64,000 bases of DNA, taken from the NCBI GenBank assembly GCA_002269645.1, contig NIVC01001502.1, forward strand, positions 177,571 through 241,570. Reading direction: 5' to 3'. This stretch comes from Macrostomum lignano. Its lineage: Eukaryota. Both the position numbers and the translations under genes were made by a program. The notes under the pieces are model-generated. The model did no database searches. It was not told the origin of the DNA and was given only the letters and a program-made list of their open reading frames with translations. This document shows, in pieces, positions 11,346-51,068 of this stretch; positions within the stretch are counted from its first letter, which is position 1; each line of letters starts with the position of its first letter.

Positions 11346-11490
11346 CACAGTAATCGAAAGTCAATATGTTTTTAGGCTTTTTTTCATTTAATGACGGACG
11401 AGTGTCCACGAAGTCCGTAATTAATAGTCACAGACTATTGTGATTGTACAAGTAGAGCCAATGCTAATGCCTGCACTGTCCAGCATTGAG

Positions 11491-23126: not shown

Positions 23127-23639
23127 TATACAATTAACCCAGACTGACCACACGTGCCACTGACCACCCAGACTCACGACAGACAGAACAGGCATGCAAA
23201 GACAAGACAGACAGAACACAAGGCGTGCAGATAAACAATGGATTAAAAGTGCATGAAAACTTGCATTATATCCATAATAATAAATGATTTTCATAGCGAC
23301 TAGAGATCAGCTGACTGCGAGTATTATTGCCAATAGCAAGGGATTGCGAATAGAAGAATAAAAAAGTGATAAGTTTTAAAAAAACAAGTACACAATGTAC
23401 TTTTGTAGCTGTGTTGTATATAAAATCTCGAAAAAGCAAAATATATAAATTTTGGATTGCACAACTAAATGAACTGCAGTAATATAGTCACGTCAGAGGG
23501 CTGATGTAATGGATTTGCATAATCATAAACTAGTTTCAATTGATTCAGGTAGAATTGTACACAGTGAAGCAATAAAATTGCTTACAATTTGTACTTTAAT
23601 TGATATACTCCAGTCTAAATATTTCGTAGATCACATCAC

Positions 23640-24362
23640 TGTACATACTGGGTACAGTACTTCAATGTACATATTGTGTACAGAACTTCAATGTACATAT
23701 TGGGTACAGTACATCAATGTACATATTGGGTACAGTACTTCAATGTACATATTGGGTACAGTACTTCAATGTACATATTGGGTACAGTACTTCAATGTAC
23801 ATATTATGTACAGTACTTCAATGTACATATTGTGTACAGTACTTCAATGTACATATTGTGTACAGTACTTCAATGTACATATTTTGTACAATACTTCAAT
23901 GTACATATTGGGTACAGTACTTCAATGTACATATTGTGTACAGTACTTCAATGTACATATTGTGTGCAGCATTTCAATGTACATATTGTGTACAATACTT
24001 CAATGTACATATTGTGTACAGTACTTCAATGTACATATTGGGTACAGTACTTCAATGTACATATTGGGTACAGTACTTCAATGTACATATTTTGTACAAT
24101 ACTTCAATGTACATATTTTGTACAATACTTCAATGTACATATTGTGTACAGTACTTCAATGTACATATTGTGTACAATACTTCAATGTACATATTGGGTA
24201 CAGTACTTCAATGTACATATTGGGTACAGTACTTCAATGTACATATTGTGTACAGTACTTCAATGTACATATTGTGTGCAGCATTTCAATGTACATATTG
24301 GGTACAGTACTTCAATGTACATATTGTGTACAGTACTTCAATGTACATATTGTGTACAGCAC
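23640..24362. repeat. 28-bp minisatellite (gtacagtacttcaatgtacatattgg/gt)n, about 26 copies
   Basis: Directly visible; explains the repetitive ORFs at 23509-24438. Confidence 0.95.
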
Positions 24363-24856
24363 GCCAATATACACATTTTGCAAAGTACTTCTTGTCCTAA
24401 ATAGGAAAAATTATTGTCCTATTAGAATTTTCCTATAAAAATTAGAGAAGGGAAAATTGAGAAGTCAAAAAACAGTCATTCATAATATTGACTGGACTGA
24501 TGAGAGGCAGCAACAACACGGCACAGTAGTTGAGAGTATTAACGAGGCTTGATAAACCTCATGACTGGACGAGTAATTAACAAATTCAATAAAAGCATAG
24601 TTAAAAAAATTAACAAAATTCTAAAATATTTTATAGTTAAGGGAGACGAAAAAGCAATTATTACATTTATTAAAAATATCTAATAATTATAATTAGAACT
24701 TCTATATATGCATAGATAAATTGCGTTATAATGAAAATAATATTGCTATTTAAAAAAGTGTCGGACATCAAGACAATCAAAAAGAATTATAGAGAATTAG
24801 GACACAGCGCAAGCATAGTAGAGCAAGAGTTGCCAGTCACACTGCAGACAGCTGGC

Positions 24857-33424: not shown

Positions 33425-36263
33425 TTTGCTTTATTAAATCTGAAAATGTCAGCTACTTGACAAAAATCGGAGATTCAATTAGACATAACAATCTACAGTA
33501 AACTTTTATAAAAACTATTTAATAAATGCAATACTAACTAAAGGCTAGGCTACCACTACCACAACTATGCTTAATGAGTAGAATTGGCGTTTTCTGTTTT
33601 TCTAATAAGTTTAGTACCTTTCTTTCTACCAAACTTGTTACGTTAAAAAATCTGGCGCGATCATTAAAATATATTTTATTCAAAGTTCGTGCTTCGTTAT
33701 TAACGCTTATGCAGTTAAATCATCTAAATGTAAAAATGAATACTATGCGAATTCCATACTACAATCTAATAACTCAATTTAGAAGACAATTTCTACGTAA
33801 AATTTAATTAAAAAACTTTAATTGCCCCTCAGTTAATTTTTAAATCAGGTCTAGGAGCACTGTGAGTTTTCAAATTAAAAACTACAGTCAACTTTCACCG
33901 CTACCCTCTCTTCACCTTCCAATAGTATATCGGACTAAAATAAAAAAGGGGTTTCTAAAATATTACCGTTTTGGTTCGGTTCCATAGTGAGAGAAATCGC
34001 GTGGTTTCCTACATTGGCAGTATACCGATTGTATTGGAAGAATACGTTGTTTTCATATCGCGAATCGAAATTCTGCCCGTTATTTTTCTAATGATTAGAT
34101 TTACTTACGCTACCTCTATGTCATGAAAATTGCATGCATGTTTTAACATAAACTGCAACAACCTGAATCTTTCTACGACTACGATCTTGCTCGTACACCA
34201 CGTCTCATAAAAGCAGAGCGCAGATTTCGCAATCCTGACTAACACGATCGTTTTTGATTTCTTACTAAGTGCGGTTTTTCACTATCCAGAAGACTCTACC
34301 ATTACTTGCTGTACCCCCCCCCAAGCAGTTGGTGTCGCTTTAATGATCATCGACCATTCTACTGGTCTCTAAAGTACGCGCTGTAGACCCGTCCCTAATG
34401 ATATAGAACCCATCTACAAATAATTATGATATTGCATGTGTGCCCACAAAGAAAAACATCAGCCCCAAATAACTTAGTATCAAAGTTCTTTGATTAAACT
34501 GCTTCCTTTCAAGTGAAATGGCGTCACTGTATGGAATGTAAATTGACTAAATAGACTGCGCGCAGCTAGCTTGTAGATCTTTCATAGCTCATTTGTACAT
34601 GTAAACAATTAATATAGCAATTTATAGCAATTTATAGCAATCTGATCAAAACTACAAGAGCCTGCGCATGCAAATGGTCACACTGAGATATACTATATAC
34701 AATTCCACATACTAAACTGTACATGCATGCATAGGTCAAAGAATCTACTATTTATAGTAGTCCTTGGCAGACAGCTGGTAGGTGCGTGAAATCGGCTCCG
34801 ATGCAATTACATGTACTGTGTATGAACATGCACATGCAAGCATTCAATTTCACAGTTTTATTCTGTACATGTAAATCCAACGCCTATTGCCCAATATGCC
34901 GTTCCGTTCAAATAATCTATACGCATGCTCAACTTTTCGCAATCGCTAATTAGAGCTAGAGATTTAAATCAACTAAATAGGGCATATGAATTAAAATATA
35001 ACAGGTAATTATTCATCCCGAGTTATATCAAATACATGTGCGTAAATACATGTAGACATTGTACATTGAAATATATTCAGATGCATGTACATGTACATGT
35101 AGCTTATACTAAGATTTCTATAAAAAAGGAGGGCACTACACTACTGTAGCTTAAATTTCGTACAGGATATCACAGTATCAGTAGATGCGAAGTGTTTGTG
35201 TACGTATTTCCTATCAGAGTTCATTTATAAAGTTTTTCGACTATACTGCACAGCGGAGCATGTTCATGTCTCGTGCAAGGACAAGTTAAGAACGTAACAG
35301 CTTTAATGAGTCCTAGTCACGTGGAACATTCCGACGTACATGTACGAGGACGAGGAGTAACCGACATCGTACATGTAGGAAGTCACGTGCAAAAAGTAAT
35401 TTTTAAATTGCTCTGGAGAATGTCGACGCCATCAATCAGCTGAGCGTCGGGTGATGTGAAAGTTTCCACCGACATCGCTGTTCATATCTGACATGTAAAG
35501 GGTTTATTCAGCTCGATCTTCCAAGTGTATTACTGGACGTACAAGTAGTAGAAGCATCAGCTAAATTACTAAATTTATGATTTTTCTAAAGCTAGAGAAC
35601 TTGAGTGGGTCGCGTTAAAATATTGCACGCGGTAGTGTTATTTGAATTATGTGCATTCACGTATACATTTTAGCCGCTATATATACATGTATATAGAGAA
35701 CCTTAAAGTGAGTATTAGTCTTCTAGAGCTCTGTATATGAACTCTAAAAATCGATGTTACAATATGTTATAAACAGTATAACTGTACATTGGCTGTCCAT
35801 ACAGTTTGCATCCTTTGATGTTTAAAATCCAAAATTCTAAATTATCAAATATTTTAACAATATGCCTACGCTAAGGGATTATATATTGTCAGGCGGACAA
35901 GTCTCACTGTCAACAATTGCTGCTGTGTGTGCTATAGAACTTGCCAATGTGAGTGTGGATCCAGCTGAATTCCGCTTCTATATGCTCCCACTGAGAGCGT
36001 ATTAGGCTTCGCTGGAACTGCATATCTGGCTGCATGCAACTATGTAGAAACTGCTGGTAGAAGATTCTTTGCCTTCCTGACATCGCTAGAAGAGCTTCCT
36101 CTAGAAGGCTTTTCGTTGCTTCTCCTTGCTTTCCCACTCATCGATCGATGCGAATTTCTAAAAGGCGAATCTGCTGTTGTCTCCGCTCTGTCCAGTAATG
36201 CCCTCCCAGCAGGGCCAGTCACCAACCCCAGCTGAGCCTTGGCGCCCTCTCTGAGGGGAGAAA

Positions 36264-39200
36264 GGGGATGTCAACTTAAGCACCAGAATGGAGCCCGAAG
36301 TTCAGCTCCGGACCAAACCGACTGCAATCGATAACTTGTCCGCCCAGACGACTAGAATCGCCGAGACATCCCATCCGGCTCCCTTCCTTGGGGTCCCAGG
36401 GGATAAAGGGGATAAAATGGGGATCTCATGTCAACTTAAGGCTCTGGAATGGAGCCCGAAGTTCAGCTCCGGACCAAACCGACTGCAATCGATAACTTGT
36501 CCGCCCAGACGACTAGAATCGCCGAGACATCCCATCCGGCTCCCTTCCTTGGGGTCCCAGGGATAAAGGGGATAAAATGGGGATCTCATGTCAACTTAAG
36601 GCTCTGGAATGGAGCCCGAAGTTCAGCTCCGGACCAAACCGATTGCAATCGATAACTTGTCGGCCCAGACGACTAGAATCGCCGAGACATCCCATCCGGC
36701 TCCCTTCCTTGGGGTCCCAGGGGATAAAGGGGATAAAATGGGGATCTCATGTCAACTTAAGGCTCTGGAATGGAGCCCGAAGTTCAGCTCCGGACCAAAC
36801 CGACTGCAATCGATAACTTGTCGGCCCAGACGACTAGAATCGCCGAGACATCCCATCCGGCTCCCTTCCTTGGGGTCCCAGGGGATAAAGGGGATAAAAT
36901 GGGGATCTCATGTCAACTTAAGGCTCTGGAATGGAGCCCGAAGTTCAGCTCCGGACCAAACCGACTGCAATCGATAAGTTGTCGGCCCAGACGACTAGAA
37001 TCGCCGAGACATCCCATCCGGCTCCCTTCCTTGGGGTCCCAGGGGATAAAGGGGATAAAATGGGGATCTCATGTCAACTTAAGGCTCTGGAATGGAGCCC
37101 GAAGTTCAGCTCCGGACCAAACCGACTGCAATCGATAACTTGTCGGCCCAGACGACTAGAATCGCCGAGACATCCCATCCGGCTCCCTTCCTTGGGGTCC
37201 CAGGGGATAAAGGGGATAAAATGGGGATCTCATGTCAACTTAAGGCTCTGGAATGGAGCCCGAAGTTCAGCTCCGGACCAAACCGACTGCAATCGATAAC
37301 TTGTCGCCCAGACGACTAGAATCGCCGAGACATCCCATCCGGCTCCCTTCCTTGGGGTCCCAGGGGATAAAGGGGATAAAATGGGGATCTCATGTCAACT
37401 TAAGGCTCTGGAATGGAGCCCGAAGTTCAGCTCCGGACCAAACCGATTGCAATCGATAACTTGTCGGCCCAGACGACTAGAATCGCCGAGACATCCCATC
37501 CGGCTCCCTTCCTTGGGGTCCCAGGGGATAAAGGGGATAAAATGGGGATCTCATGTCAACTTAAGGCTCTGGAATGGAGCCCGAAGTTCAGCTCCGGACC
37601 AAACCGACTGCAATCGATAACTTGTCGGCCCAGACGACTAGAATCGCCGAGACATCCCATCCGGCTCCCTTCCTTGGGGTCCCAGGGGATAAAGGGGATA
37701 AAATGGGGATCTCATGTCAACTTAAGGCTCTGGAATGGAGCCCGAAGTTCAGCTCCGGACCAAACCGACTGCAATCGATAAGTTGTCGGCCCAGACGACT
37801 AGAATCGCCGAGACATCCCATCCGGCTCCCTTCCTTGGGGTCCCAGGGGATAAAGGGGATAAAATGGGGATCTCATGTCAACTTAAGGCTCTGGAATGGA
37901 GCCCGAAGTTCAGCTCCGGACCAAACCGACTGCAATCGATAACTTGTCGGCCCAGACGACTAGAATCGCCGAGACATCCCATCCGGCTCCCTTCCTTGGG
38001 GTCCCAGGGGATAAAGGGGATAAAATGGGGATCTCATGTCAACTTAAGGCTCTGGAATGGAGCCCGAAGTTCAGCTCCGGACCAAACCGATTGCAATCGA
38101 TAACTTGTCGGCCCAGACGACTAGAATCGCCGAGACATCCCATCCGGCTCCCTTCCTTGGGGTCCCAGGGGATAAAGGGGATAAAATGGGGATCTCATGT
38201 CAACTTAAGGCTCTGGAATGGAGCCCGAAGTTCAGCTCCGGACCAAACCGACTGCAATCGATAACTTGTCGCCCAGACGACTAGAATCGCCGAGACATCC
38301 CATCCGGCTCCCTTCCTTGGGGTCCCAGGGGATAAAGGGGATAAAATGGGGATCTCATGTCAACTTAAGGCTCTGGAATGGAGCCCGAAGTTCAGCTCCG
38401 GACCAAACCGATTGCAATCGATAACTTGTCGGCCCAGACGACTAGAATCGCCGAGACATCCCATCCGGCTCCCTTCCTTGGGGTCCCAGGGGATAAAGGG
38501 GATAAAATGGGATCTCATGTCAACTTAAGGCTCTGGAATGGAGCCCGAAGTTCAGCTCCGGACCAAACCGATTGCAATCGATAACTTGTCGGCCCAGACG
38601 ACTAGAATCGCCGAGACATCCCATCCGGCTCCCTTCCTTGGGGTCCCAGGGGATAAAGGGGATAAAATGGGGATCTCATGTCAACTTAAGGCTCTGGAAT
38701 GGAGCCCGAAGTTCAGCTCCGGACCAAACCGATTGCAATCGATAACTTGTCGGCCCAGACGACTAGAATCGCCGAGACATCCCATCCGGCTCCCTTCCTT
38801 GGGGTCCCAGGGGATAAAGGGGATAAAATGGGGATCTCATGTCAACTTAAGGCTCTGGAATGGAGCCCGAAGTTCAGCTCCGGACCAAACCGATTGCAAT
38901 CGATAAGTTGTCGGCCCAGACGACTAGAATCGCCGAGACATCCCATCCGGCTCCCTTCCTTGGGGTCCCAGGGGATAAAGGGGATAAAATGGGGATCTCA
39001 TGTCAACTTAAGGCTCTGGAATGGAGCCCGAAGTTCAGCTCCGGACCAAACCGATTGCAATCGATAACTTGTCGGCCCAGACGACTAGAATCGCCGAGAC
39101 ATCCCATCCGGCTCCCTTCCTTGGGGTCCCAGGGGATAAAGGGGATAAAATGGGGATCTCATGTCAACTTAAGGCTCTGGAATGGAGCCCGAAGTTCAGC

Positions 39201-40311
39201 TCCGGCCCAAACCGACTGCAATCGATAACTTGTCGGCCCAGACGACTAGAATCGCCGAGACATCCCATCCGGCTCCCTTCCTTGGGGTCCCAGGGGATAA
39301 AGGGGATAAAATGGGGATCTCATGTCAACTTAAGGCCTGGAATGGAGCCCGAAGTTCAGCTCCGGACCAAACCGACTGCAATCGATAACTTGTCGGCCCA
39401 GACGACTAGAATCGCCGAGACATCCCATCCGGCTCCCTTCCTTGGGGTCCCAGGGGATAAAGGGGATAAAATGGGGATCTCATGTCAACTTAAGGCTCTG
39501 GAATGGAGCCCGAAGTTCAGCTCCGGACCAAACCGATTGCAATCGATAACTTGTCGGCCCAGACGACTAGAATCGCCGAGACATCCCATCCGGCTCCCTT
39601 CCTTGGGGTCCCAGGGGATAAAGGGGATAAAATGGGGATCTCATGTCAACTTAAGGCTCTGGAATGGAGCCCGAAGTTCAGCTCCGGACCAAACCGATTG
39701 CAATCGATAACTTGTCGGCCCAGACGACTAGAATCGCCGAGACATCCCATCCGGCTCCCTTCCTTGGGGTCCCAGGGGATAAAGGGGATAAAATGGGGAT
39801 CTCATGTCAACTTAAGGCTCTGGAATGGAGCCCGAAGTTCAGCTCCGGACCAAACCGATTGCAATCGATAAGTTGTCGGCCCAGACGACTAGAATCGCCG
39901 AGACATCCCATCCGGCTCCCTTCCTTGGGGTCCCAGGGGATAAAGGGGATAAAATGGGGATCTCATGTCAACTTAAGGCTCTGGAATGGAGCCCGAAGTT
40001 CAGCTCCGGACCAAACCGACTGCAATCGATAACTTGTCGGCCCAGACGACTAGAATCGCCGAGACATCCCATCCGGCTCCCTTCCTTGGGGTCCCAGGGG
40101 ATAAAGGGGATAAAATGGGGATCTCATGTCAACTTAAGGCCCTGGAATGGAGCCCGAAGTTCAGCTCCGGACCAAACCGATTGCAATCGATAACTTGTCG
40201 GCCCAGACGACTAGAATCGCCGAGACATCCCATCCGGTTTCAAGTGACGAAGCTCTATTCAATTCGAATATCGCATTAGCGGGTGTATTTTATTTTAGCT
40301 ATTATATATTG
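36264..40311 (+). repeat. Left TIR: about 24.6 copies of a 161-bp unit plus about 75 bp of unique inner segment
   Basis: 161-bp periodicity (ORF starts 36609, 36770, 36931 ...). The inner segment tttcaagtgacgaagctctattcaattcgaatatcgcattagcgggtgtattttatt mirrors 44099-44172. Confidence 0.95.
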
Positions 40312-40551
40312 TTTGCATTGTAATATTTCCGTCGTTTAATTTTTCTGGATTTTTGAGAATGTTTTCGCGGTTTTGATTTGACCACTTTAGGCGAGAGATT
40401 TTTGATACTGTGCGTCAAGTATTTGTAGCATTAGTTTAAGTGATATATTTTAAGTGATATATTAATGAAGTTAAGGTTTTGGTCAGTTTTTCTTACTTAG
40501 TTTTATGACAGGTGCAGATTTGTTGCAGATTGCGTTTTATACTTGCTAGTA

Positions 40552-43488
40552 ATGTCCGATTTTACTTGCTCTCAATGTGGTCATCAATTCAGCAAAGCAG
40601 CCAATTTGAACCGACATCTCGAAACGACTAGATGTGGTCGCTGCTCATCTGAATCGTCTGGAGCCTTCGCGCCTCCGAGAAACGCACGAGAGGCGCTTCA
40701 GTTTCTTGCGGTCGGTGGTAAGTATGTGAAAGTTTTTTTGAACCCAAACCTTTTTCCACGAACCGCAAATGAGAAGGAGTTCAAACGTATTTGCGGTCTT
40801 AGCTATAGTGATTTCGATAGCTTCTCAGAAATGTTACCAGAAGTATCTCGCCTTCGTATTTTGACAAAGCCATCTCGAATATTTTTGTACCTGAAGAAGC
40901 TTCGCCAAGGTTGCAGCTTTCAATCATTAGCTTTCGATTTCAACATTTCTGCCCAAAGAGCATGCGACATTTTTTGGGAGATTGCCAAGGAGCAGTACCT
41001 ACGGGATCCATATCAACCGAGGTCGATAGCGTCGACTCCGATTCAGACTCTGCTTGAGGAAAATGTAGTACGCGATCAATTTATTCTCGGTGTATTTCAC
41101 ACACTACTCAAAGGCAAGAAGCTTGTTCTTCTAGTGGGTGATCATACTTACTTTTATCTCCCTAAGAGCAGCTCACACCACACGCAAATTCGAACTTACT
41201 TTTCCGGCAAGAAAATGAATGTGAACAAAAAAATGGCGGTTGTCAACAGTAGAGGAAAAATTATCTACACCGCTCCCCTTACCGCCGCTATCTCGCCAAC
41301 AATGGGCGATGGGAATTTGACTGCAATGCAAGTTGACATGGAGGCTGAAGGACTAATAGAGCCCATTTTGTTGCGCATTCTGTGCTCTGTACAGAAAGAT
41401 TATCACGTTATTGGCATTTTCGACAAAGGTTACAGCCACCAACTTTGTTCACCAACTTCGGTTAACTTCCGCGACTTTATAGAGACTAATAGTAAAGGCT
41501 GCACGACGCTTCTATTTCCGACCAGTCCAGGTGACCGAGTTCTAAACGAGCAGTTTGAATTTGTAAATAATGAGGCTCCTGTTGGTGACCGATCAATACC
41601 AGGAAAGCTTACATCAATCGAAGCAAATACAAGTCGCTGCGCTACGCTTTTCCGTTATCTCGTAGAATGTAGCTTTGCTGCAATCAAGCAGGACAAATGC
41701 ATAAATGAGCGACAGGAGCCGTACCAATGGCTACATGCCCCAGAGTTTACCGAACGCAGCCGGCTCGATGTTGTTATTGAAAACTCCATGGCAAAATTCA
41801 ACCGTTCGCATCCAGGATTTCAAGCTACAAGGAGTCTGCCGCCGTCATGGTCAGATTGCTCCATGTTCGAATACGGACGGAACTTTGCTAAACGTCTTTT
41901 CATTGCGAATGAGCTAGACGAAATTGAGCAACTTGAGTACAATTGCGATTTGACTCGAATACCAACGAGTTCTACCCGAAAATGGACAGCAGTGGATCCC
42001 CTGGACCCTGAAAGTTCAGGGTTCCCCAGCGTTGACGAAAGAAATCTGGAAGAGCTTAGCATCGGCCCATACCACGTTCTTCAGTCAAAACGCTACATCG
42101 AAAACGTCAGAGTTCATGAGGTGCTCAGTAGCTACGCTGGAGACTCGTGGCGCGATTTCGAATTGTTGATTTCTGAACTGCCAAGCCATTTAAAATGCTG
42201 GAAGTTTCATCAGCGAGCGCCACCAAAGGGGTGGAGCAGTAAGTTTGGAGAATGGAGGCCATCTTGGATATATTTAGCCGTTCTTCATTCCCGTCATCGG
42301 TCAAAAACTTACCGAGTTGTCCTTCGTATTTGCGAAACTGCAAGTGGTAACCGATTCGGATTTCGTGACTCGGGGCTGCTGCGTCTGCATGGCTACTTTT
42401 CATCCTCAAAGGCCGGAAGCAGGACAGCAGGGTGTGACAGTCATGTTATGGCTGTGGTTAGAATGCTAGGCTGTTATGCATATCACCCCGAAAGCTACAA
42501 CATGTGCGGCAGCAGCTTCCGATTTATTGACAGTGCTTTGCCAAAAGCACTGATTGCCAATCTTTACAATGATCAATCTGGTGGTCATCCAGCTCCAAAT
42601 GCACCTCGCAGAGACAGTGCTGAATCGCAGCAAGATGAACAGAGGCACAGTTCAAATGCTACTGGTTCATTGAATTCGCCGAAGAAGTTATTTGGGTTGC
42701 CAAATAATGGCCTGCAGTGCTACGCAAATGCAGCAGTGCAATTGTTTCTCTGCCTGCATTCTAATGGATGCATTTTAAAAGAGACTAGCAACGACCAAGT
42801 CCATCGAGAGCTGCTTCGTCTTCTGACGGAGATGCAACAGCGGTCTGCAACAGTCACTCCACTGTTAACGGCAGTTCGGTTGCAACATCCAGATTCATTT
42901 CAAACAAATCAGCACCATTGCGTCAACGAATTTGTTCAAACGCTTCTAATACATCTGGAATTTCTGTCATCAGATGCTTTCACAGAATTTTCACTCATTC
43001 AAACTTGTCGGGATTGCCAGCGCACAAGTGCTGAAGTTCCTGTTGGCACAATCGATAACAGAGTGATTTGCATTCCTCTCTGTCAATTTGAGCGCTCAAT
43101 TGTCAGTTTAGACAAAATCTTCTGCGCTTTTGTCGCTCCTCAGGTAGTGAAATGTTCGGACGCCAATTGCCTGGGCGATTGTAATCAAGAGATCGTAGTA
43201 ACACCTGGAAAGTTTACCCTGATATATCTTGATCGTGCTAGTATGGATGGCCACCTTAAGCTTCAAACTCCTGTAAGCTTTTCTTCAAGGTCAGGGGGTG
43301 TTTCTACACTTGGTAAGCCAGTGGCCACAATATCACACCATGGAAACCGACTGAAATCGGGACATTTCACAGCAAGCGTACTGAGCTGTGTGTGGACGAG
43401 AATTGACGACATGAAAGTTACGTCAGACTATAACCCGTTCGTACGTGAGCCTGAGTGCATCGTGCTCGTTGCACTTTTAAACTCGTAA
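40552..43488 (+). CDS. Transposase-deubiquitinase fusion, 978 aa from ATG 40552: C2H2 finger + HTH + DDE_Tnp_4-like transposase + degenerate SWIM + USP (peptidase C19) domain
   Basis: Uninterrupted ORF. FTCSQCGHQFSKAANLNRHL (C2H2); IFLYLKKLRQGCSFQSLAFDFNISAQRACDIF (HTH_Tnp_4-like); VGDHT...TYFSGKK.N..K...GIFDKGY...RYLVECSF (D-D-E); GLPNNGLQCYANAAVQ (USP Cys box); ATISHHG...SGHFTA...WTRIDD (USP His box). Confidence 0.88.
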   Translation: MSDFTCSQCGHQFSKAANLNRHLETTRCGRCSSESSGAFAPPRNAREALQFLAVGGKYVKVFLNPNLFPRTANEKEFKRICGLSYSDFDSFSEMLPEVSRLRILTKPSRIFLYLKKLRQGCSFQSLAFDFNISAQRACDIFWEIAKEQYLRDPYQPRSIASTPIQTLLEENVVRDQFILGVFHTLLKGKKLVLLVGDHTYFYLPKSSSHHTQIRTYFSGKKMNVNKKMAVVNSRGKIIYTAPLTAAISPTMGDGNLTAMQVDMEAEGLIEPILLRILCSVQKDYHVIGIFDKGYSHQLCSPTSVNFRDFIETNSKGCTTLLFPTSPGDRVLNEQFEFVNNEAPVGDRSIPGKLTSIEANTSRCATLFRYLVECSFAAIKQDKCINERQEPYQWLHAPEFTERSRLDVVIENSMAKFNRSHPGFQATRSLPPSWSDCSMFEYGRNFAKRLFIANELDEIEQLEYNCDLTRIPTSSTRKWTAVDPLDPESSGFPSVDERNLEELSIGPYHVLQSKRYIENVRVHEVLSSYAGDSWRDFELLISELPSHLKCWKFHQRAPPKGWSSKFGEWRPSWIYLAVLHSRHRSKTYRVVLRICETASGNRFGFRDSGLLRLHGYFSSSKAGSRTAGCDSHVMAVVRMLGCYAYHPESYNMCGSSFRFIDSALPKALIANLYNDQSGGHPAPNAPRRDSAESQQDEQRHSSNATGSLNSPKKLFGLPNNGLQCYANAAVQLFLCLHSNGCILKETSNDQVHRELLRLLTEMQQRSATVTPLLTAVRLQHPDSFQTNQHHCVNEFVQTLLIHLEFLSSDAFTEFSLIQTCRDCQRTSAEVPVGTIDNRVICIPLCQFERSIVSLDKIFCAFVAPQVVKCSDANCLGDCNQEIVVTPGKFTLIYLDRASMDGHLKLQTPVSFSSRSGGVSTLGKPVATISHHGNRLKSGHFTASVLSCVWTRIDDMKVTSDYNPFVREPECIVLVALLNS

Positions 43489-44098
43489 AAGCATTTTTAG
43501 CGAAAATACAATTGTTTTAAGCGAGTGTACTGTACGTTTTGTATTGCAGATTTTAAAGGACATGCAGATTAAGAAACAATGTCATCTCACGCATTCTTTA
43601 CGTACCATAGGTTACATGTGAAGATAATTCAGACTGACATCAAATAACAAAAGCTTTGAATTAGTTGTTTCAATTTCTTTTAGACTCACAATTAACTAAA
43701 AATTGGAAGTATTTTTTACTGAAGCAAAGAACTTAAACCCAAAAACCGTTTCTTAGGACTGAGAAACTTTTGCAATTATGATTTTACTAAGCTTTGCGTG
43801 AGAGGCGTTACTTTATTTGCTTAAAAACGTGTGCTGCTTTGCATGACATGCTTTGTTTTTATTACTTTGATAACTTGTACAGCTTTGCATGATATGCTTT
43901 GTATCCATTACGTCATAACTTGTACAGCCTTGCGTGATATTCTTTATTTTACCAATATACATGGTTTCGGTTTATCGTCAAAAGTTCTGCTTACTAATAA
44001 CCAAACGAATTTACAAGTTAATTTTTTCAAACTGAGTTTCCAGATCAGCATTTTTAACAGGTTTCGATACGAGCAAATCATTTTTATTACTTAACAAT

Positions 44099-47000
44099 CA
44101 ATGTATAATAGCTGAAATAAAATACACCCGCTAATGCGATATTCGAATTGAATAGAGCTTCGTCACTTGAAACCGGATGGGATGTCTCGGCGATTCTAGT
44201 CGTCTGGGCCGACAACTTATCGATTGCAGTCGGTTTGGTCCGGAGCTGAACTTCGGGCTCCATTCCAGAGCCTTAAGTTGACACGAGATCCCCATTTTAT
44301 CCCCTTTATCCCCTGGGACCCCAAGGAAGGGAGCCGGATGGGATGTCTCGGCGATTCTAGTCGTCTGGGCCGACAAGTTATCGATTGCAGTCGGTTTGGT
44401 CCGGAGCTGAACTTCGGGCTCCATTCCAGAGCCTTAAGTTGACATGAGATCCCCATTTTATCCCCTTTATCCCCTGGGACCCCAAGGAAGGGAGCCGGAT
44501 GGGATGTCTCGGCGATTCTAGTCGTCTGGGCCGACAACTTATCGATTGCAGTCGGTTTGGTCCGGAGCTGAACTTCGGGCTCCATTCCAGAGCCTTAAGT
44601 TGACATGAGATCCCCATTTTATCCCCTTTATCCCCTGGGACCCCAAGGAAGGGAGCCGGATGGGATGTCTCGGCGATTCTAGTCGTCTGGGCCGACAAGT
44701 TATCGATTGCAGTCGGTTTGGTCCGGAGCTGAACTTCGGGCTCCATTCCAGAGCCTTAAGTTGACATGAGATCCCCATTTTATCCCCTTTATCCCCTGGG
44801 ACCCCAAGGAAGGGAGCCGGATGGGATGTCTCGGCGATTCTAGTCGTCTGGGCCGACAAGTTATCGATTGCAGTCGGTTTGGTCCGGAGCTGAACTTCGG
44901 GCTCCATTCCAGAGCCTTAAGTTGACATGAGATCCCCATTTTATCCCCTTTATCCCCTGGGACCCCAAGGAAGGGAGCCGGATGGGATGTCTCGGCGATT
45001 CTAGTCGTCTGGGCCGACAAGTTATCGATTGCAGTCGGTTTGGTCCGGAGCTGAACTTCGGGCTCCATTCCAGAGCCTTAAGTTGACATGAGATCCCCAT
45101 TTTATCCCCTTTATCCCCTGGGACCCCAAGGAAGGGAGCCGGATGGGATGTCTCGGCGATTCTAGTCGTCTGGGCCGACAAGTTATCGATTGCAGTCGGT
45201 TTGGTCCGGAGCTGAACTTCGGGCTCCATTCCAGAGCCTTAAGTTGACATGAGATCCCCATTTTATCCCCTTTATCCCCTGGGACCCCAAGGAAGGGAGC
45301 CGGATGGGATGTCTCGGCGATTCTAGTCGTCTGGGCCGACAAGTTATCGATTGCAGTCGGTTTGGTCCGGAGCTGAACTTCGGGCTCCATTCCAGGCCTT
45401 AAGTTGACATGAGATCCCCATTTTATCCCCTTTATCCCCTGGGACCCCAAGGAAGGGAGCCGGATGGGATGTCTCGGCGATTCTAGTCGTCTGGGCCGAC
45501 AAGTTATCGATTGCAGTCGGTTTGGTCCGGAGCTGAACTTCGGGCTCCATTCCAGGCCTTAAGTTGACATGAGATCCCCATTTTATCCCCTTTATCCCCT
45601 GGGACCCCAAGGAAGGGAGCCGGATGGGATGTCTCGGCGATTCTAGTCGTCTGGGCCGACAAGTTATCGATTGCAGTCGGTTTGGTCCGGAGCTGAACTT
45701 CGGGCTCCATTCCAGAGCCTTAAGTTGACATGAGATCCCCATTTTATCCCCTTTATCCCCTGGGACCCCAAGGAAGGGAGCCGGATGGGATGTCTCGGCG
45801 ATTCTAGTCGTCTGGGCCGACAAGTTATCGATTGCAGTCGGTTTGGTCCGGAGCTGAACTTCGGGCTCCATTCCAGAGCCTTAAGTTGACATGAGATCCC
45901 CATTTTATCCCCTTTATCCCCTGGGACCCCAAGGAAGGGAGCCGGATGGGATGTCTCGGCGATTCTAGTCGTCTGGGCCGACAAGTTATCGATTGCAGTC
46001 GGTTTGGTCCGGAGCTGAACTTCGGGCTCCATTCCAGAGCCTTAAGTTGACATGAGATCCCCATTTTATCCCCTTTATCCCCTGGGACCCCAAGGAAGGG
46101 AGCCGGATGGGATGTCTCGGCGATTCTAGTCGTCTGGGCCGACAAGTTATCGATTGCAGTCGGTTTGGTCCGGAGCTGAACTTCGGGCTCCATTCCAGAG
46201 CCTTAAGTTGACATGAGATCCCCATTTTATCCCCTTTATCCCCTGGGACCCCAAGGAAGGGAGCCGGATGGGATGTCTCGGCGATTCTAGTCGTCTGGGC
46301 CGACAAGTTATCGATTGCAGTCGGTTTGGTCCGGAGCTGAACTTCGGGCTCCATTCCAGAGCCTTAAGTTGACATGAGATCCCCATTTTATCCCCTTTAT
46401 CCCCTGGGACCCCAAGGAAGGGAGCCGGATGGGATGTCTCGGCGATTCTAGTCGTCTGGGCGACAAGTTATCGATTGCAGTCGGTTTGGTCCGGAGCTGA
46501 ACTTCGGGCTCCATTCCAGAGCCTTAAGTTGACATGAGATCCCCATTTTATCCCCTTTATCCCCTGGGACCCCAAGGAAGGGAGCCGGATGGGATGTCTC
46601 GGCGATTCTAGTCGTCTGGGCCGACAAGTTATCGATTGCAGTCGGTTTGGTCCGGAGCTGAACTTCGGGCTCCATTCCAGAGCCTTAAGTTGACATGAGA
46701 TCCCCATTTTATCCCCTTTATCCCCTGGGACCCCAAGGAAGGGAGCCGGATGGGATGTCTCGGCGATTCTAGTCGTCTGGGCCGACAAGTTATCGATTGC
46801 AGTCGGTTTGGTCCGGAGCTGAACTTCGGGCTCCATTCCAGGCCTTAAGTTGACATGAGATCCCCATTTTATCCCCTTTATCCCCTGGGACCCCAAGGAA
46901 GGGAGCCGGATGGGATGTCTCGGCGATTCTAGTCGTCTGGGCCGACAAGTTATCGATTGCAGTCGGTTTGGTCCGGAGCTGAACTTCGGGCTCCATTCCA

Positions 47001-50000
47001 GGCCTTAAGTTGACATGAGATCCCCATTTTATCCCCTTTATCCCCTGGGACCCCAAGGAAGGGAGCCGGATGGGATGTCTCGGCGATTCTAGTCGTCTGG
47101 GCCGACAAGTTATCGATTGCAGTCGGTTTGGGCCGGAGCTGAACTTCGGGCTCCATTCCAGAGCCTTAAGTTGACATGAGATCCCCATTTTATCCCCTTT
47201 ATCCCCTGGGACCCCAAGGAAGGGAGCCGGATGGGATGTCTCGGCGATTCTAGTCGTCTGGGCCGACAAGTTATCGATTGCAGTCGGTTTGGTCCGGAGC
47301 TGAACTTCGGGCTCCATTCCAGGCCTTAAGTTGACATGAGATCCCCATTTTATCCCCTTTATCCCCTGGGACCCCAAGGAAGGGAGCCGGATGGGATGTC
47401 TCGGCGATTCTAGTCGTCTGGGCCGACAAGTTATCGATTGCAGTCGGTTTGGGCCGGAGCTGAACTTCGGGCTCCATTCCAGAGCCTTAAGTTGACATGA
47501 GATCCCCATTTTATCCCCTTTATCCCCTGGGACCCCAAGGAAGGGAGCCGGATGGGATGTCTCGGCGATTCTAGTCGTCTGGGCCGACAAGTTATCGATT
47601 GCAGTCGGTTTGGTCCGGAGCTGAACTTCGGGCTCCATTCCAGAGCCTTAAGTTGACATGAGATCCCCATTTTATCCCCTTTATCCCCTGGGACCCCAAG
47701 GAAGGGAGCCGGATGGGATGTCTCGGCGATTCTAGTCGTCTGGGCCGACAAGTTATCGATTGCAGTCGGTTTGGTCCGGAGCTGAACTTCGGGCTCCATT
47801 CCAGAGCCTTAAGTTGACATGAGATCCCCATTTTATCCCCTTTATCCCCTGGGACCCCAAGGAAGGGAGCCGGATGGGATGTCTCGGCGATTCTAGTCGT
47901 CTGGGCCGACAAGTTATCGATTGCAGTCGGTTTGGTCCGGAGCTGAACTTCGGGCTCCATTCCAGAGCCTTAAGTTGACATGAGATCCCCATTTTATCCC
48001 CTTTATCCCCTGGGACCCCAAGGAAGGGAGCCGGATGGGATGTCTCGGCGATTCTAGTCGTCTGGGCCGACAAGTTATCGATTGCAGTCGGTTTGGTCCG
48101 GAGCTGAACTTCGGGCTCCATTCCAGAGCCTTAAGTTGACATGAGATCCCCATTTTATCCCCTTTATCCCCTGGGACCCCAAGGAAGGGAGCCGGATGGG
48201 ATGTCTCGGCGATTCTAGTCGTCTGGGCCGACAAGTTATCGATTGCAGTCGGTTTGGTCCGGAGCTGAACTTCGGGCTCCATTCCAGGCCTTAAGTTGAC
48301 ATGAGATCCCCATTTTATCCCCTTTATCCCCTGGGACCCCAAGGAAGGGAGCCGGATGGGATGTCTCGGCGATTCTAGTCGTCTGGGCCGACAAGTTATC
48401 GATTGCAGTCGGTTTGGTCCGGAGCTGAACTTCGGGCTCCATTCCAGGCCTTAAGTTGACATGAGATCCCCATTTTATCCCCTTTATCCCCTGGGACCCC
48501 AAGGAAGGGAGCCGGATGGGATGTCTCGGCGATTCTAGTCGTCTGGGCCGACAACTTATCGATTGCAGTCGGTTTGGGCCGGAGCTGAACTTCGGGCTCC
48601 ATTCCAGAGCCTTAAGTTGACATGAGATCCCCATTTTATCCCCTTTATCCCCTGGGACCCCAAGGAAGGGAGCCGGATGGGATGTCTCGGCGATTCTAGT
48701 CGTCTGGGCCGACAAGTTATCGATTGCAGTCGGTTTGGTCCGGAGCTGAACTTCGGGCTCCATTCCAGAGCCTTAAGTTGACATGAGATCCCCATTTTAT
48801 CCCCTTTATCCCCTGGGACCCCAAGGAAGGGAGCCGGATGGGATGTCTCGGCGATTCTAGTCGTCTGGGCCGACAAGTTATCGATTGCAGTCGGTTTGGT
48901 CCGGAGCTGAACTTCGGGCTCCATTCTGGTGCTTAAGTTGACATGAGATCCCCATTTTATCCCCTTTATCCCCTGGGACCCCAAGGAAGGGAGCCGGATG
49001 GGATGTCTCGGCGATTCTAGTCGTCTGGGCCGACAAGTTATCGATTGCAGTCGGTTTGGTCCGGAGCTGAACTTCGGGCTCCATTCCAGAGCCTTAAGTT
49101 GACATGAGATCCCCATTTTATCCCCTTTATCCCCTGGGACCCCAAGGAAGGGAGCCGGATGGGATGTCTCGGCGATTCTAGTCGTCTGGGCCGACAAGTT
49201 ATCGATTGCAGTCGGTTTGGTCCGGAGCTGAACTTCGGGCTCCATTCCAGAGCCTTAAGTTGACATGAGATCCCCATTTTATCCCCTTTATCCCCTGGGA
49301 CCCCAAGGAAGGGAGCCGGATGGGATGTCTCGGCGATTCTAGTCGTCTGGGCCGACAAGTTATCGATTGCAGTCGGTTTGGTCCGGAGCTGAACTTCGGG
49401 CTCCATTCCAGGCCTTAAGTTGACATGAGATCCCCATTTTATCCCCTTTATCCCCTGGGACCCCAAGGAAGGGAGCCGGATGGGATGTCTCGGCGATTCT
49501 AGTCGTCTGGGCCGACAAGTTATCGATTGCAGTCGGTTTGGTCCGGAGCTGAACTTCGGGCTCCATTCCAGGCCTTAAGTTGACATGAGATCCCCATTTT
49601 ATCCCCTTTATCCCCTGGGACCCCAAGGAAGGGAGCCGGATGGGATGTCTCGGCGATTCTAGTCGTCTGGGCCGACAACTTATCGATTGCAGTCGGTTTG
49701 GGCCGGAGCTGAACTTCGGGCTCCATTCCAGAGCCTTAAGTTGACATGAGATCCCCATTTTATCCCCTTTATCCCCTGGGACCCCAAGGAAGGGAGCCGG
49801 ATGGGATGTCTCGGCGATTCTAGTCGTCTGGGCCGACAAGTTATCGATTGCAGTCGGTTTGGTCCGGAGCTGAACTTCGGGCTCCATTCCAGAGCCTTAA
49901 GTTGACATGAGATCCCCATTTTATCCCCTTTATCCCCTGGGACCCCAAGGAAGGGAGCCGGATGGGATGTCTCGGCGATTCTAGTCGTCTGGGCCGACAA

Positions 50001-50876
50001 GTTATCGATTGCAGTCGGTTTGGTCCGGAGCTGAACTTCGGGCTCCATTCCAGGGCCTTAAGTTGACATGAGATCCCCATTTTATCCCCTTTATCCCCTG
50101 GGACCCCAAGGAAGGGAGCCGGATGGGATGTCTCGGCGATTCTAGTCGTCTGGGCCGACAACTTATCGATTGCAGTCGGTTTGGGCCGGAGCTGAACTTC
50201 GGGCTCCATTCCAGAGCCTTAAGTTGACATGAGATCCCCATTTTATCCCCTTTATCCCCTGGGACCCCAAGGAAGGGAGCCGGATGGGATGTCTCGGCGA
50301 TTCTAGTCGTCTGGGCCGACAAGTTATCGATTGCAGTCGGTTTGGTCCGGAGCTGAACTTCGGGCTCCATTCCAGAGCCTTAAGTTGACATGAGATCCCC
50401 ATTTTATCCCCTTTATCCCCTGGGACCCCAAGGAAGGGAGCCGGATGGGATGTCTCGGCGATTCTAGTCGTCTGGGCCGACAAGTTATCGATTGCAGTCG
50501 GTTTGGTCCGGAGCTGAACTTCGGGCTCCATTCTGGTGCTTAAGTTGACATGAGATCCCCATTTTATCCCCTTTATCCCCTGGGACCCCAAGGAAGGGAG
50601 CCGGATGGGATGTCTCGGCGATTCTAGTCGTCTGGGCCGACAAGTTATCGATTGCAGTCGGTTTGGTCCGGAGCTGAACTTCGGGCTCCATTCCAGAGCC
50701 TTAAGTTGACATGAGATCCCCATTTTATCCCCTTTATCCCCTGGGACCCCAAGGAAGGGAGCCGGATGGGATGTCTCGGCGATTCTAGTCGTCTGGGCCG
50801 ACAAGTTATCGATTGCAGTCGGTTTGGTCCGGAGCTGAACTTCGGGCTCCATTCTGGTGCTTAAGTTGACATCCCC
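44099..50876 (-). repeat. Right TIR: about 41.6 copies of the same 161-bp unit in inverted orientation
   Basis: Reverse-complement units with 161-bp periodicity (ORF ends 44424, 44585, 44746 ...). Confidence 0.95.
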
Positions 50877-51068
50877 TTTCATTTCTTTGTATTTCTTTGT
50901 ACGCTGCTGTGCTCGGCTAAAGTTGACTGAGACCAGCGAGAGACTAAACTTAGTACTCTGCTGGGGGAGAGGACTATTTCAGTAGCTGGCTATTCGAGCA
51001 AAAACAAGCCGCAGTCTCCCTTGACGTGTCGCTGACGCATCGTTGTTCGTCCAATTTCAAAAGCCGTG

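What the first reader, a model, noticed from the sequence alone, without database searches (positions are those of the whole stretch)
36261..50879. 14.6-kb Spy-like transposon whose TIRs are 4.0-kb and 6.8-kb satellite arrays
Seen: perfect inverted ends; insertion between AAA and TTT with no duplication (empty site GAAATTTC); both arms are head-to-tail copies of a 161-bp unit closed by a shared unique inner segment of about 75 bp; arrays make up about 74% of the element. Each unit contains a near copy of the terminus (ggggatctcatgtcaacttaag versus terminal ggggatgtcaacttaag). Established: AAA|TTT insertion without a TSD is the hallmark of Spy elements (PHIS group), and foldback elements such as Galileo have repeat-containing TIRs. 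Inference: an autonomous element that carries and disperses a nucleosome-sized satellite, with multimerised transposase-binding sites.
Basis: partly seen in the sequence, partly recalled or inferred. Interest (0 to 1): 0.85.

Follow-up and report, generated by a model that had tools for sequence, protein, structure and literature searches.

The report
Spy-like transposon with satellite arms
A 14.6-kb, apparently intact cut-and-paste DNA transposon in the flatworm Macrostomum lignano has inverted ends that have grown into 4.0-kb and 6.8-kb arrays of a 161-bp repeat. It encodes a divergent Spy-type transposase fused to a deubiquitinase domain, so it is a new variant of the known "foldback" transposon design rather than a new kind of element.

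Summary
Two inverted arrays of a 161-bp unit (about 25 and 42 copies, ~99% identical) run to identical termini, GGGGATGTCAACTTAAG. They flank a 3.9-kb core with one intact 978-aa ORF, sit between AAA and TTT, and have no target-site duplication.

The ORF reads C2H2 finger, HTH_Tnp_4, DDE core (D197/D291/E372), degenerate SWIM-like motif, then a C-terminal USP/UCH domain with its Cys-His-Asp triad. A profile comparison links it (probability 100%, E 4e-49) to ~680-aa proteins that carry the published Spy signature. The element itself misses several Spy criteria: spacing is D(93)D(80)E, about 7 of 15 Spy-specific residues are kept, and the end does not fit GGANNNNG.

A 51%-identical relative has the same end, AAA|GAGGATGTCAACTTA, but no array. 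No empty site or second copy could be reached, so AAA|TTT insertion, mobility and satellite dispersal remain inferences.

Repeat-built TIRs are already known (Foldback, Galileo, Tetris). What is new is the Spy-like lineage, the flatworm host, the array size and the USP fusion, which recurs in metagenomic relatives.

Verdict: real feature, new variant of a known kind, moderate to high interest.

The parts
36261..36263 (.). AAA flank: presumed left half of an AAA|TTT target, or the outermost TIR bases
   Evidence: Sequence. The IR extends through GAAA/TTTC. The relative L001 also has AAA before its terminus.
36264..36280 (+). Left terminus GGGGATGTCAACTTAAG
   Evidence: One of only 2 matches in the window; 0 expected by chance.
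36264..40237 (+). Left arm: 24 full units plus one partial unit of the 161-bp repeat. The first unit is the 'terminal-type' variant (AAGCACCAGAATGG).
   Evidence: TRF; unit decomposition and variant map.
40238..40325 (+). Left inner unique part of the TIR
   Evidence: Inverted repeat I8; BLAST 96% over 78 bp.
40326..40551 (+). AT-rich 5' leader upstream of the ORF; includes a 14-bp x2 repeat at 40435-40463
   Evidence: Sequence; TRF.
40552..43488 (+). Single intact ORF of 978 aa: transposase-USP fusion
   Evidence: ORF list, Pfam, homologues. AlphaFold2 gives pLDDT above 90 for most of aa 70-670.
40561..40626 (+). C2H2 zinc finger (aa 4-25)
   Evidence: Pfam zf-C2H2 E 0.0025, below the curated cut-off. 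Conserved in P0001 and in P0003-P0005 and P0007.
40861..40977 (+). HTH_Tnp_4 helix-turn-helix (aa 104-142)
   Evidence: Pfam E 7.6e-5, 22.7 bits against a cut-off of 27. Helices in the model. Aligns with the HTH of the Spy-like group.
41119..41685 (+). RNase-H-like DDE catalytic core (aa 190-378): D197 at 41140-41142, D291 at 41422-41424, E372 at 41665-41667
   Evidence: D197, D291 and E372 are invariant in 13 diverse homologues. They align with the D/D/E of the Spy-like group. Secondary-structure order is b1-b2-b3-a1-b4-...-a4. The relative P0006 hits DDE_Tnp_4.
42379..42486 (+). Degenerate SWIM-like motif (GYFSSSKAGSRTAGCDSHVMAV; the first two Cys are lost)
   Evidence: Aligns with WYCxCKxGARTVGCCxHV of the Spy-like proteins. 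P0078 hits Pfam SWIM.
42694..43425 (+). USP/UCH deubiquitinase domain (aa 715-958): C723 at 42718-42720, H938 at 43363-43365, D952 at 43405-43407
   Evidence: Pfam UCH E 2.6e-9, 37.5 bits against a cut-off of 23.9. Cys and His boxes align with USP12. The same fusion occurs in P0008, P0032 and P0036.
43489..44084 (+). AT-rich 3' non-coding part of the core, with a 45-bp x2.5 repeat at 43836-43950
   Evidence: TRF; sequence.
44085..44172 (-). Right inner unique part of the TIR
44173..50876 (-). Right arm: 41 full units plus one partial unit of the 161-bp repeat. Terminal-type units sit at positions 1, 3 and 13 from the end.
   Evidence: TRF; variant map.
50860..50876 (-). Right terminus (reverse complement of GGGGATGTCAACTTAAG)
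50877..50879 (.). TTT flank: presumed right half of the target
   Evidence: Sequence.

Best explanation
This is a structurally intact cut-and-paste DNA transposon of the PHIS superfamily, from a divergent Spy-like lineage, in the genome of Macrostomum lignano.

Shown:
- One ORF encodes a C2H2 finger, an HTH, an RNase-H-like DDE domain, a SWIM-like remnant and a USP deubiquitinase.
- The two ends are identical and lie between AAA and TTT without a TSD.
- Each TIR is a tandem array of a 161-bp unit. Each unit begins with the terminal sequence and is closed by a unique inner TIR segment.

Inferred:
- The ancestral TIR was about 200 bp: about 110 bp now found in each unit plus the 88-bp inner segment.
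- Its outer part was duplicated in tandem, then expanded by unequal exchange or replication slippage, separately in each arm.
- The transposase binds the ATGTCAACTTA core present at the termini and once per unit. The arms are therefore stacks of 25 and 42 secondary binding sites, as in Galileo.
- Cleavage happens only at the outermost copies, where the 5-bp CTCAT insert is missing.
- As in Spy elements, integration is between AAA and TTT without duplication.
- The USP domain removes ubiquitin from the transposase itself or from chromatin or host factors.
For: Anatomy.

Protein domains: Pfam UCH lies above its curated cut-off; HTH_Tnp_4 and zf-C2H2 lie below theirs.

Family: the profile search finds 298 relatives. 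D197, D291 and E372 are invariant. hhalign to ~680-aa proteins with D(79-82)D(48)E gives probability 100% and E 4e-49 over aa 67-660. Those proteins fit the Spy paper's spacing and its ordered list of Spy-specific residues (PMC4122938).

Fold: AlphaFold2 models the transposase part with most of aa 70-670 above pLDDT 90 and the RNase-H order of strands and helices. The best PDB fold match is Tn5 transposase, and it is weak (E 0.011).

Ends: L001, whose protein is 51% identical, carries AAA|GAGGATGTCAACTTAGG about 800 bp upstream of its ORF. Active Spy ends begin AAA|GGG, AAA|GAG or AAA|GGA (PMC11304231 supplement). No TSD is present.

Separate evolution of the arms: a variant private to the left arm occurs in 11 of 24 units and in 0 of 41 on the right. 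The right arm holds a duplicated block that includes terminal-type units. Within-arm identity exceeds between-arm identity (only 5 of 300 permutations reach the observed difference).

USP: the triad aligns with USP12. The fusion recurs in P0008, P0032 and P0036, with the Cys and His boxes conserved.

Precedent for terminal-derived tandem repeats acting as extra binding sites: Tetris and Galileo (PMC4079207).
Against: - Only one copy was seen. There is no empty site, no second insertion and no read-level support for the array lengths.
- Published Spy criteria are only partly met: D(93)D(80)E against D(79-80)D(44-62)E, an end of GGGGATGT against GGANNNNG, and about 7 of 15 Spy-specific residues.
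- The ~680-aa reference proteins are anonymous. I identify them as Spy from published signatures, not from named sequences.
- The SWIM-like motif has lost two of its four zinc ligands.
- HTH_Tnp_4 and C2H2 score below the Pfam cut-offs.
- The USP part of the model has low confidence.
- Arms of 4-7 kb may be too long for transposition, so this copy may be immobile.
- The unit's linker contains AAAGGGGAT, which is AAA plus the first six terminal bases. That leaves open whether AAA belongs to the element.
Confidence: 0.7

Rival explanations
1. The element is real but dead. A Spy-like element with ordinary, roughly 200-bp TIRs inserted here, and the arms then expanded in place by unequal exchange. 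The arrays are a local by-product, this copy can no longer move, and no satellite is being dispersed.
For: The relative L001 has no array between its terminus and its ORF. Other relatives carry only 2-6 copies of short subterminal repeats. The arms have different lengths, private variants and internal block duplications, which points to in-place turnover. For Tetris, large arrays were proposed to disrupt transposition.
Against: The ORF is intact. The termini are perfect for 77 bp, and the outermost units of the two arms differ at a single base. That points to youth or continuing constraint. Short-read metagenome contigs could not have assembled long arrays even if the relatives had them.
Confidence: 0.35
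2. AAA and TTT, or GAAA and TTTC, are the outermost bases of the TIR and not host DNA. In that case the element does not share the Spy insertion mode.
For: Inverted complementarity runs through GAAA/TTTC. The unit linker contains AAAGGGGAT. The Spy authors met the same ambiguity and needed empty sites to resolve it.
Against: All three visible ends (two here, one in L001) have AAA directly before G[GA]GGATGTCAAC, while the base further out differs (G here, T in L001). In related Spy elements, empty sites and transposition assays showed that AAA/TTT is host DNA. No TSD appears at any alternative boundary.
Confidence: 0.15
3. Assembly artefact. The inverted arms, or their lengths, come from collapsed, expanded or chimeric long reads across a satellite.
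For: M. lignano assemblies are described as redundant and repeat-rich (PMC12801592). The window is not identical to the public Mlig_3_7 contig that carries the same gene (97-98% identity). No reads are available here.
Against: The arms are not mirror images: they differ in unit number, variant order and private substitutions. The core is unique, asymmetric and coding. Both arms stop at exactly the same base, with the same terminal-type unit and the same 5-bp difference from the internal junctions. A foldback chimera would be symmetric.
Confidence: 0.08
4. A pre-existing free 161-bp satellite underwent an inversion or palindrome formation around a transposase gene. The satellite would then be primary and the transposon-like look secondary.
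For: The unit cannot be traced outside this element with the data at hand.
Against: The start of the unit is the transposon terminus, and that terminus is conserved in a relative with 51% protein identity that has no satellite. Both arrays end at the same position and are closed by the same 88-bp unique inner segment. The 161-mer is absent from the other 49 kb of the window.
Confidence: 0.04

Closest known systems
Spy transposons (PHIS superfamily; Han et al. 2014, PMC4122938; active cgSpy and cvSpy, PMC11304231)
   Same: Single ORF. N-terminal HTH plus a DDE_Tnp_4-type core plus a C-terminal CxC...CCxH region. Full-length profile homology to proteins with the Spy signature. AAA and TTT flanks without a TSD. 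Ends beginning G(G/A)G directly after AAA. TIR length is highly variable within the group.
   Different: DDE spacing is D(93)D(80)E. About half of the Spy-specific residues are changed. The end does not fit GGANNNNG. It has an added C2H2 finger and a USP domain, giving 978 aa against about 700. Its TIRs of 4.0 and 6.8 kb are built of subrepeats, whereas published Spy TIRs reach at most 1,474 bp and were reported to lack subrepeat structure. The host phylum is Platyhelminthes, whereas Spy was reported from arthropods, molluscs, cnidarians and a rotifer.
Galileo (P superfamily, Drosophila), Foldback/FB, and Tm1 (Mutator/Foldback, root-knot nematodes, PMC3169594)
   Same: Autonomous or semi-autonomous DNA transposons whose long TIRs contain internal tandem repeats. 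In Galileo the repeats carry extra transposase-binding sites. The arms differ in length and are structurally dynamic.
   Different: The transposase superfamilies are unrelated (P/THAP, MULE). [quoted passage not shown] Here the repeat unit starts at the very terminus, and the arrays hold 25 and 42 units.
Tetris / DAIBAM (Drosophila virilis; PMC4079207)
   Same: The TIR has a terminal domain, then tandem repeats that share a stretch with the terminal domain, then an inner domain. The repeats expand by unequal crossing-over and seed satellite arrays.
   Different: Tetris is non-autonomous and its transposase is unknown. Its unit is 220 bp and AT-rich, and complete elements carry only a few units. 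The element here carries an intact transposase and a GC-rich (55%) 161-bp unit.
Protease-carrying DNA transposons (for example Ginger elements, PMC2836005, and transposon-embedded VTD deubiquitinases, PMC9741609)
   Same: A ubiquitin or ubiquitin-like protease encoded by a DNA transposon.
   Different: Here the protease is a USP/UCH (Pfam PF00443) domain fused in frame to a PHIS transposase. I found no report of this in the searched literature. That is absence in an open-access library only.

Membership tests
Spy group (PHIS superfamily) | Insertion exactly between AAA and TTT with no target-site duplication | tested here: inconclusive
   Both ends are flanked by AAA and TTT, and no TSD appears at offsets 0-7. 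The relative L001 has AAA before its end. No empty site was seen, and AAA/TTT could be part of the TIR.
Spy group (PHIS superfamily) | A single long ORF encoding the transposase, with no second Myb/SANT or YqaJ ORF | tested here: met
   One 978-aa ORF. The only other ORF of 60 aa or more lying wholly in the core outside the transposase gene is an 87-aa GTG-start ORF in the 45-bp repeat region.
Spy group (PHIS superfamily) | Catalytic spacing D(79-80)D(44-62)E | tested here: not met
   D197, D291 and E372 give D(93)D(80)E. The ~680-aa relatives have D(79-82)D(48)E.
Spy group (PHIS superfamily) | The 15 Spy-specific conserved residues in the DDE domain | tested here: not met
   By eye on the hhalign alignment, about 7 of 15 are kept (Y, S, G, P, N and T are kept; SSN, KP, NDA, DRGFRD, Q, V and W are changed). 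The count is approximate because the published figure is not available as text.
Spy group (PHIS superfamily) | Terminal consensus 5'-GGANNNNG-3' | tested here: not met
   The end is GGGGATGT, and GAGGATGT in L001. It does begin GGG or GAG, like active cgSpy and cvSpy.
Spy group (PHIS superfamily) | N-terminal HTH DNA-binding motif | tested here: met
   HTH_Tnp_4 at aa 104-142, E 7.6e-5, below the Pfam cut-off. It aligns with the HTH region of the Spy-like group. Helices appear in the model.
Spy group (PHIS superfamily) | Transposase groups with Spy rather than ISL2EU, PIF/Harbinger or IS5 in a phylogeny | not testable with these tools
   No named reference sequences of the four groups were available. 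The only evidence is profile homology to anonymous proteins with the Spy signature.
PHIS superfamily (IS5 / PIF-Harbinger-type DDE_Tnp_4 transposases) | DDE_Tnp_4-type RNase-H core with the conserved D..K..D..D..P..R(3)E pattern | tested here: met
   D197(22)K220(32)D253(37)D291...R368(3)E372. The D-to-P and P-to-R gaps are longer than published. Relatives P0006, P0057 and P0078 hit Pfam DDE_Tnp_4.
PIF/Harbinger | 3-bp TWA target-site duplication and a second ORF encoding a Myb/SANT protein | tested here: not met
   No TSD and no second ORF.
ISL2EU | TSD, N-terminal THAP domain and a second ORF with a YqaJ exonuclease | tested here: not met
   No TSD. The N-terminus is a C2H2 finger, with no THAP hit. 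No second ORF.
Foldback-like elements (an architectural class, not a clade) | Long terminal inverted repeats composed largely of tandem subrepeats | tested here: met
   Arms of 4,062 and 6,792 bp, about 98% of which is 161-bp units.
USP/UCH deubiquitinases (peptidase C19, Pfam PF00443) | Cys box and His box with the catalytic Cys, His and Asp/Asn | tested here: met
   Pfam 37.5 bits against a cut-off of 23.9. C723, H938 and D952 align with the USP12 catalytic residues and are conserved in three relatives. Enzyme activity was not tested.

The most novel reading that the evidence does not exclude
An active Spy-like transposon lineage whose transposase is fused to a working USP deubiquitinase. 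The lineage is found in a flatworm and is widespread in marine eukaryotic plankton. In M. lignano it moves together with kilobase arrays of its own terminal binding site, and so seeds a 161-bp satellite around the genome. That would make it an autonomous, experimentally tractable example of a transposon giving rise to a satellite, in an animal where transgenesis is possible.
Probability: 0.25. Interest if true: 0.78.

Novelty: new variant of a known kind. Interest (0 to 1): 0.6.

Why it matters
- It would extend Spy-type, TSD-less transposons to Platyhelminthes. It would also define a divergent clade with a transposase-deubiquitinase fusion, which hints at a counter-measure against ubiquitin-dependent control of the transposase or of chromatin.
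- It is an unusually clean case for satellite birth from a transposon. The transposase gene is intact, the termini are exact, and 25 and 42 copies of a unit that starts with the terminus sit in one element. Questions raised for Galileo and Tetris become testable with a defined protein and site: do extra binding sites help or block transposition, and when does an array escape as a satellite?
- Inverted arms of 4-7 kb can form hairpins. They are likely hotspots for breaks and inversions, and for assembly errors, in a genome used as a regeneration model.
- Active Spy elements are being developed as gene-transfer tools, so a relative with different ends and domains is of practical interest.

Tried and rejected
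- Metagenome scan for relatives with the protein alignment: 341 pattern hits, none confirmed.
- Metagenome scan for the terminus (GGATGTCAACTTA N2-10 TGGAAT): 23 hits. This is about what I estimated for chance. None is preceded by AAAG[GA] and none is linked to a transposase.
- Exact-protein look-ups of the transposase and of a satellite-encoded ORF, hoping to find other copies: nothing on record.
- Last homologue search, on the flanking ORF 53204-53821, aimed at reaching allelic or homeologous loci for an empty site: no hit.
- The public contig NIVC01001502.1 is 97-98% identical to the left part of the window. The 10-kb flank limit stops about 20 kb short of the insertion site.
- Boundaries of the distant USP-bearing TARA family (L027-L036): the contigs share their sequence up to a (GGGATT)n tract and show one left-side break without AAA. 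The ends were not resolved.
- Contigs of two Spy-like ~680-aa proteins (L037, L038): no recognisable TIRs, so I could not show directly that this reference group has AAA|TTT ends.
- Similarity of the left flank (AGGGGAGAAAGGGGAT) to the unit linker: not significant once GGGGAT is excluded (182 of 500 shuffles do as well). I rejected it as evidence that the element extends further left.
- PDB sequence search with the whole protein: only weak zinc-finger hits.
- PDB fold search: best match Tn5 transposase at E 0.011. This fits an RNase-H transposase but is weak.
- Rfam and tRNA scans of the window: nothing.
- Literature searches for a USP-fused PHIS transposase and for this element in M. lignano: nothing found.

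Full report
**Observation**

The structure is real and lies at the stated coordinates.
- Tandem Repeats Finder reports a 161-bp array at 36268-40237 (24.7 copies, 99% matches) and its reverse complement at 44173-50872 (41.7 copies, 99%).
- Splitting at GTCAACTTAAG gives 25 and 42 units of 160-161 bp.
- The 17-mer GGGGATGTCAACTTAAG occurs only at 36264-36280 (+) and 50860-50876 (-), with none expected by chance.
- The two ends are perfectly complementary for 77 bp, or 81 bp if GAAA/TTTC is counted.
- The arrays are closed on the inside by a shared unique segment, 40238-40325 and 44085-44172.
- The arrays make up 73% of the 14,613-bp element.
- The flanks read AAA and TTT, and no direct repeat of 2-10 bp is present at any boundary offset from 0 to 7.
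- Every unit carries GGGGATCTCATGTCAACTTAAG, which is the terminus with a 5-bp CTCAT insert.
- The 161-mer and the flanks are unique within the window.

The one part of the observation that is not an observation is the "empty site GAAATTTC". It is deduced. Because AAA/TTT and GAAA/TTTC are inverted complements, this copy alone cannot say whether they are host or element DNA.

**Host**

The intronless ASIC/ENaC ORF at 6498-8285 (-) is 100% identical to Macrostomum lignano protein BOX15_Mlig031795g1. The public contig that carries this gene is GCA_002269645.1, NIVC01001502.1. It is 97-98% identical to the window over the parts I could fetch. The window is therefore another haplotype, homeologue or assembly of the same flatworm.

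**The core and its protein**

The 3.9-kb core holds one intact ORF, 40552-43488 (+), 978 aa. Pfam results:
- UCH/USP domain at aa 715-958: E 2.6e-9, above the curated cut-off.
- HTH_Tnp_4 at aa 104-142: E 7.6e-5, below the cut-off.
- C2H2 finger at aa 4-25: below the cut-off.

The word-indexed search found a single relative, P0001 (51% identity over aa 6-560), on a 3-kb JGI metagenome contig. The exhaustive profile search found 298 relatives. The nearest group (P0003-P0008, P0010, P0012, P0023, P0032, P0036) is 22-30% identical, 490-1,120 aa long, and comes from ENA, TARA and Logan assemblies. Three of them (P0008, P0032, P0036) also end in a UCH domain with conserved Cys and His boxes. The fusion is therefore a recurrent trait of the lineage and not an accident of this locus.

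D197, D291 and E372 are invariant across these 13 sequences. AlphaFold2 with a 54-sequence alignment models most of aa 70-670 at pLDDT above 90. It gives the RNase-H order: D197 on strand 1, D291 just after strand 4, E372 on the following long helix. The USP part is poorly modelled. The best PDB fold match is Tn5 transposase, and it is weak (E 0.011). Aligned with USP12, the catalytic residues are C723, H938 and D952.

**Relation to Spy**

More distant hits of the profile search are proteins of about 680-700 aa with DDE_Tnp_4, HTH_Tnp_4 and a C-terminal CxC...CCxH motif. Their spacing is D(79-82)D(48)E. That matches the published Spy signature, D(79-80)D(44-62)E, and their conserved residues follow the order of the 15 Spy-specific residues listed by Han et al. 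(PMC4122938). A profile-profile comparison of our clade with these proteins gives probability 100% and E 4e-49 over aa 67-660, with the three catalytic residues aligned.

The transposase is therefore homologous over its whole length to Spy-type transposases. It is not a canonical Spy:
- Its spacing is D(93)D(80)E.
- About 7 of the 15 Spy-specific residues are kept.
- The SWIM-like motif has lost its first two cysteines.
- It carries an extra C2H2 finger and a USP domain.

I could not build a rooted phylogeny because no named reference sequences were available. Calling the ~680-aa group Spy rests on published signatures.

**The ends**

The contig of P0001 carries ttAAA|GAGGATGTCAACTTAGG about 800 bp upstream of its ORF. 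So GGATGTCAACTTA and the preceding AAA are conserved between elements whose proteins are only 51% identical, while the base before AAA differs. Experimentally active Spy elements begin AAA|GGGCC, AAA|GAGCC and AAA|GGAC (PMC11304231 supplement), and in Spy the AAA/TTT was shown to be host DNA by empty sites. By homology the same is likely here, but it is not shown. The end does not fit the published GGANNNNG consensus.

**The arms**

- Units are about 99% identical.
- The outermost unit of each arm is a distinct "terminal-type" variant (AAGCACCAGAATGG instead of AAGGCTCTGGAATGG). It also sits at positions 3 and 13 of the right arm, inside a duplicated block.
- A C-to-T variant is private to the left arm: 11 of 24 units, against 0 of 41 on the right.
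- Within-arm identity slightly exceeds between-arm identity; only 5 of 300 permutations reach the observed difference.

The arms therefore turn over separately, as expected from unequal exchange. The innermost unit breaks off after about 110 bp into the unique inner segment. This suggests an ancestral TIR of about 200 bp whose outer part became tandemly duplicated.

L001 has no array at its visible end. Other relatives have only short subterminal repeats of 2-6 copies, although short-read contigs could not have assembled long arrays. Published long Spy TIRs (up to 1,474 bp) were reported to lack subrepeats.

**Mechanism**

Shown: the anatomy and the protein domains.

Inferred:
- The N-terminal C2H2/HTH region binds the ATGTCAACTTA core at the termini and once per unit, which gives 67 sites in all.
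- The DDE domain cuts only at the outermost copies, which lack CTCAT, and integrates between AAA and TTT without a staggered cut.
- The internal sites act as accessory or decoy binding sites, as described for Galileo and proposed for Tetris (PMC4079207).
- The USP domain removes ubiquitin from the transposase or from chromatin.
- Whether arms of 4-7 kb still allow transposition is open.

**Rivals**

- In-place expansion of a now immobile copy (0.35; compatible with the main reading).
- AAA/TTT as part of the TIR (0.15).
- Assembly artefact (0.08). This is unlikely because the arms are not mirror images yet end at exactly the same base.
- A satellite that captured a gene (0.04). This is contradicted by conservation of the terminus in a relative that has no satellite.

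**Comparison and novelty**

Transposons whose TIRs are built of tandem repeats, and which seed satellites, are known: Foldback, Galileo, Tetris and Tm1. New here are:
- the PHIS/Spy-like lineage;
- the host phylum (Spy was reported from arthropods, molluscs, cnidarians and a rotifer);
- the scale, with 25 and 42 units reaching the very terminus;
- the combination with an intact ORF;
- the USP fusion, for which I found no report.

I rate it a new variant of a known kind, with interest 0.6.

**Decisive tests I could not run**

An empty-site comparison, for example NIVC01001502.1 near 16-17 kb, and a genome-wide census of termini and 161-mers.

Noticed in passing
window 57512-62010 (+): A Gypsy-type LTR retrotransposon: a 264-aa gag with a zinc knuckle and a 1,268-aa pol ORF. 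It sits in a block of 64-66% GC, far above the 29-55% of the rest of the window.
   Followed up: no
window 20181-29790: A dense cluster of minisatellites: 20 bp x107 at 20181-22321 (AT skew -0.44), 26 bp x29 at 23636-24391, 22 bp x47 at 26097-27135, 30 bp x18 at 28398-28930, and others. Several of them produce long spurious ORFs.
   Followed up: no
window 4670-16500, compared with L039 (GCA_002269645.1 NIVC01001502.1, 36425-58215): The window is only 97-98% identical to the public Mlig_3_7 contig that encodes the identical ASIC protein, and the minisatellites differ in length. The window is therefore a second haplotype, homeologue or assembly. That contig should contain the site homologous to the insertion, about 20 kb beyond what I could fetch.
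   Followed up: partly
window 50917-50932: About 45 bp outside the right end lies ctaaagttgactgaga. This is the reverse complement of TCTCA-GTCAACTTTAG and matches 15 of 17 positions of the unit junction. In a shuffle test 15 of 200 shuffles did as well, so this may be chance or a relic of an older end.
   Followed up: partly
window 36399-36428, and every unit: The 51-bp part of the unit that is absent from the innermost partial unit contains GGGGATAAAGGGGATAAAATGGGGAT. That is three copies of the first six terminal bases, two of them preceded by AAA. The terminus equals the internal junction minus 16 bp (AAAATGGGGATCTCAT). The origin is unexplained: possibly end-to-end or self-insertion events, or a short binding-site repeat.
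   Followed up: partly
window 52614-53824 (+): Two adjacent ORFs in different frames (197 and 206 aa) encode a Cys-rich repeated motif (CP.PR...GPC...). No homologue was found among 5.8 billion clustered proteins, and the ORFs lie 1.7 kb from the right end of the element.
   Followed up: partly
L027-L036 (TARA Oceans and other marine metagenome contigs): A distant USP-bearing relative (P0032, 1,119 aa) is present at 99.4-99.9% identity in at least 19 contigs from different samples. It always has an upstream 454-aa ORF, and where the right side is assembled the sequence runs into a (GGGATT)n tract. This looks like an abundant element of an unidentified marine eukaryote.
   Followed up: partly
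L002 5832-6346: Another USP-bearing relative (P0173, 1,048 aa) has about 5 copies of a 101-102-bp tandem repeat just downstream of its ORF. This is a small-scale version of the repeat-rich ends seen in the window.
   Followed up: partly
P0020 (UniRef100_A0A1I8IYQ6, M. lignano) and P0011 (UPI0007A1D47C): P0020, an M. lignano gene model, contains a fragment 50% identical to aa 341-470 of this transposase, so the genome holds at least one further diverged family of the same lineage. P0011 (2,393 aa, 43% identical over aa 348-571) is a UniParc entry of unknown organism.
   Followed up: no
window 6498-8285 (-) and 11557-18726 (-): An intronless ASIC/ENaC channel gene lies next to a large ion-channel gene with ORFs of 786 and 473 aa. 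The homologous region of the public contig is annotated with a 496-aa Ion_trans product.
   Followed up: no
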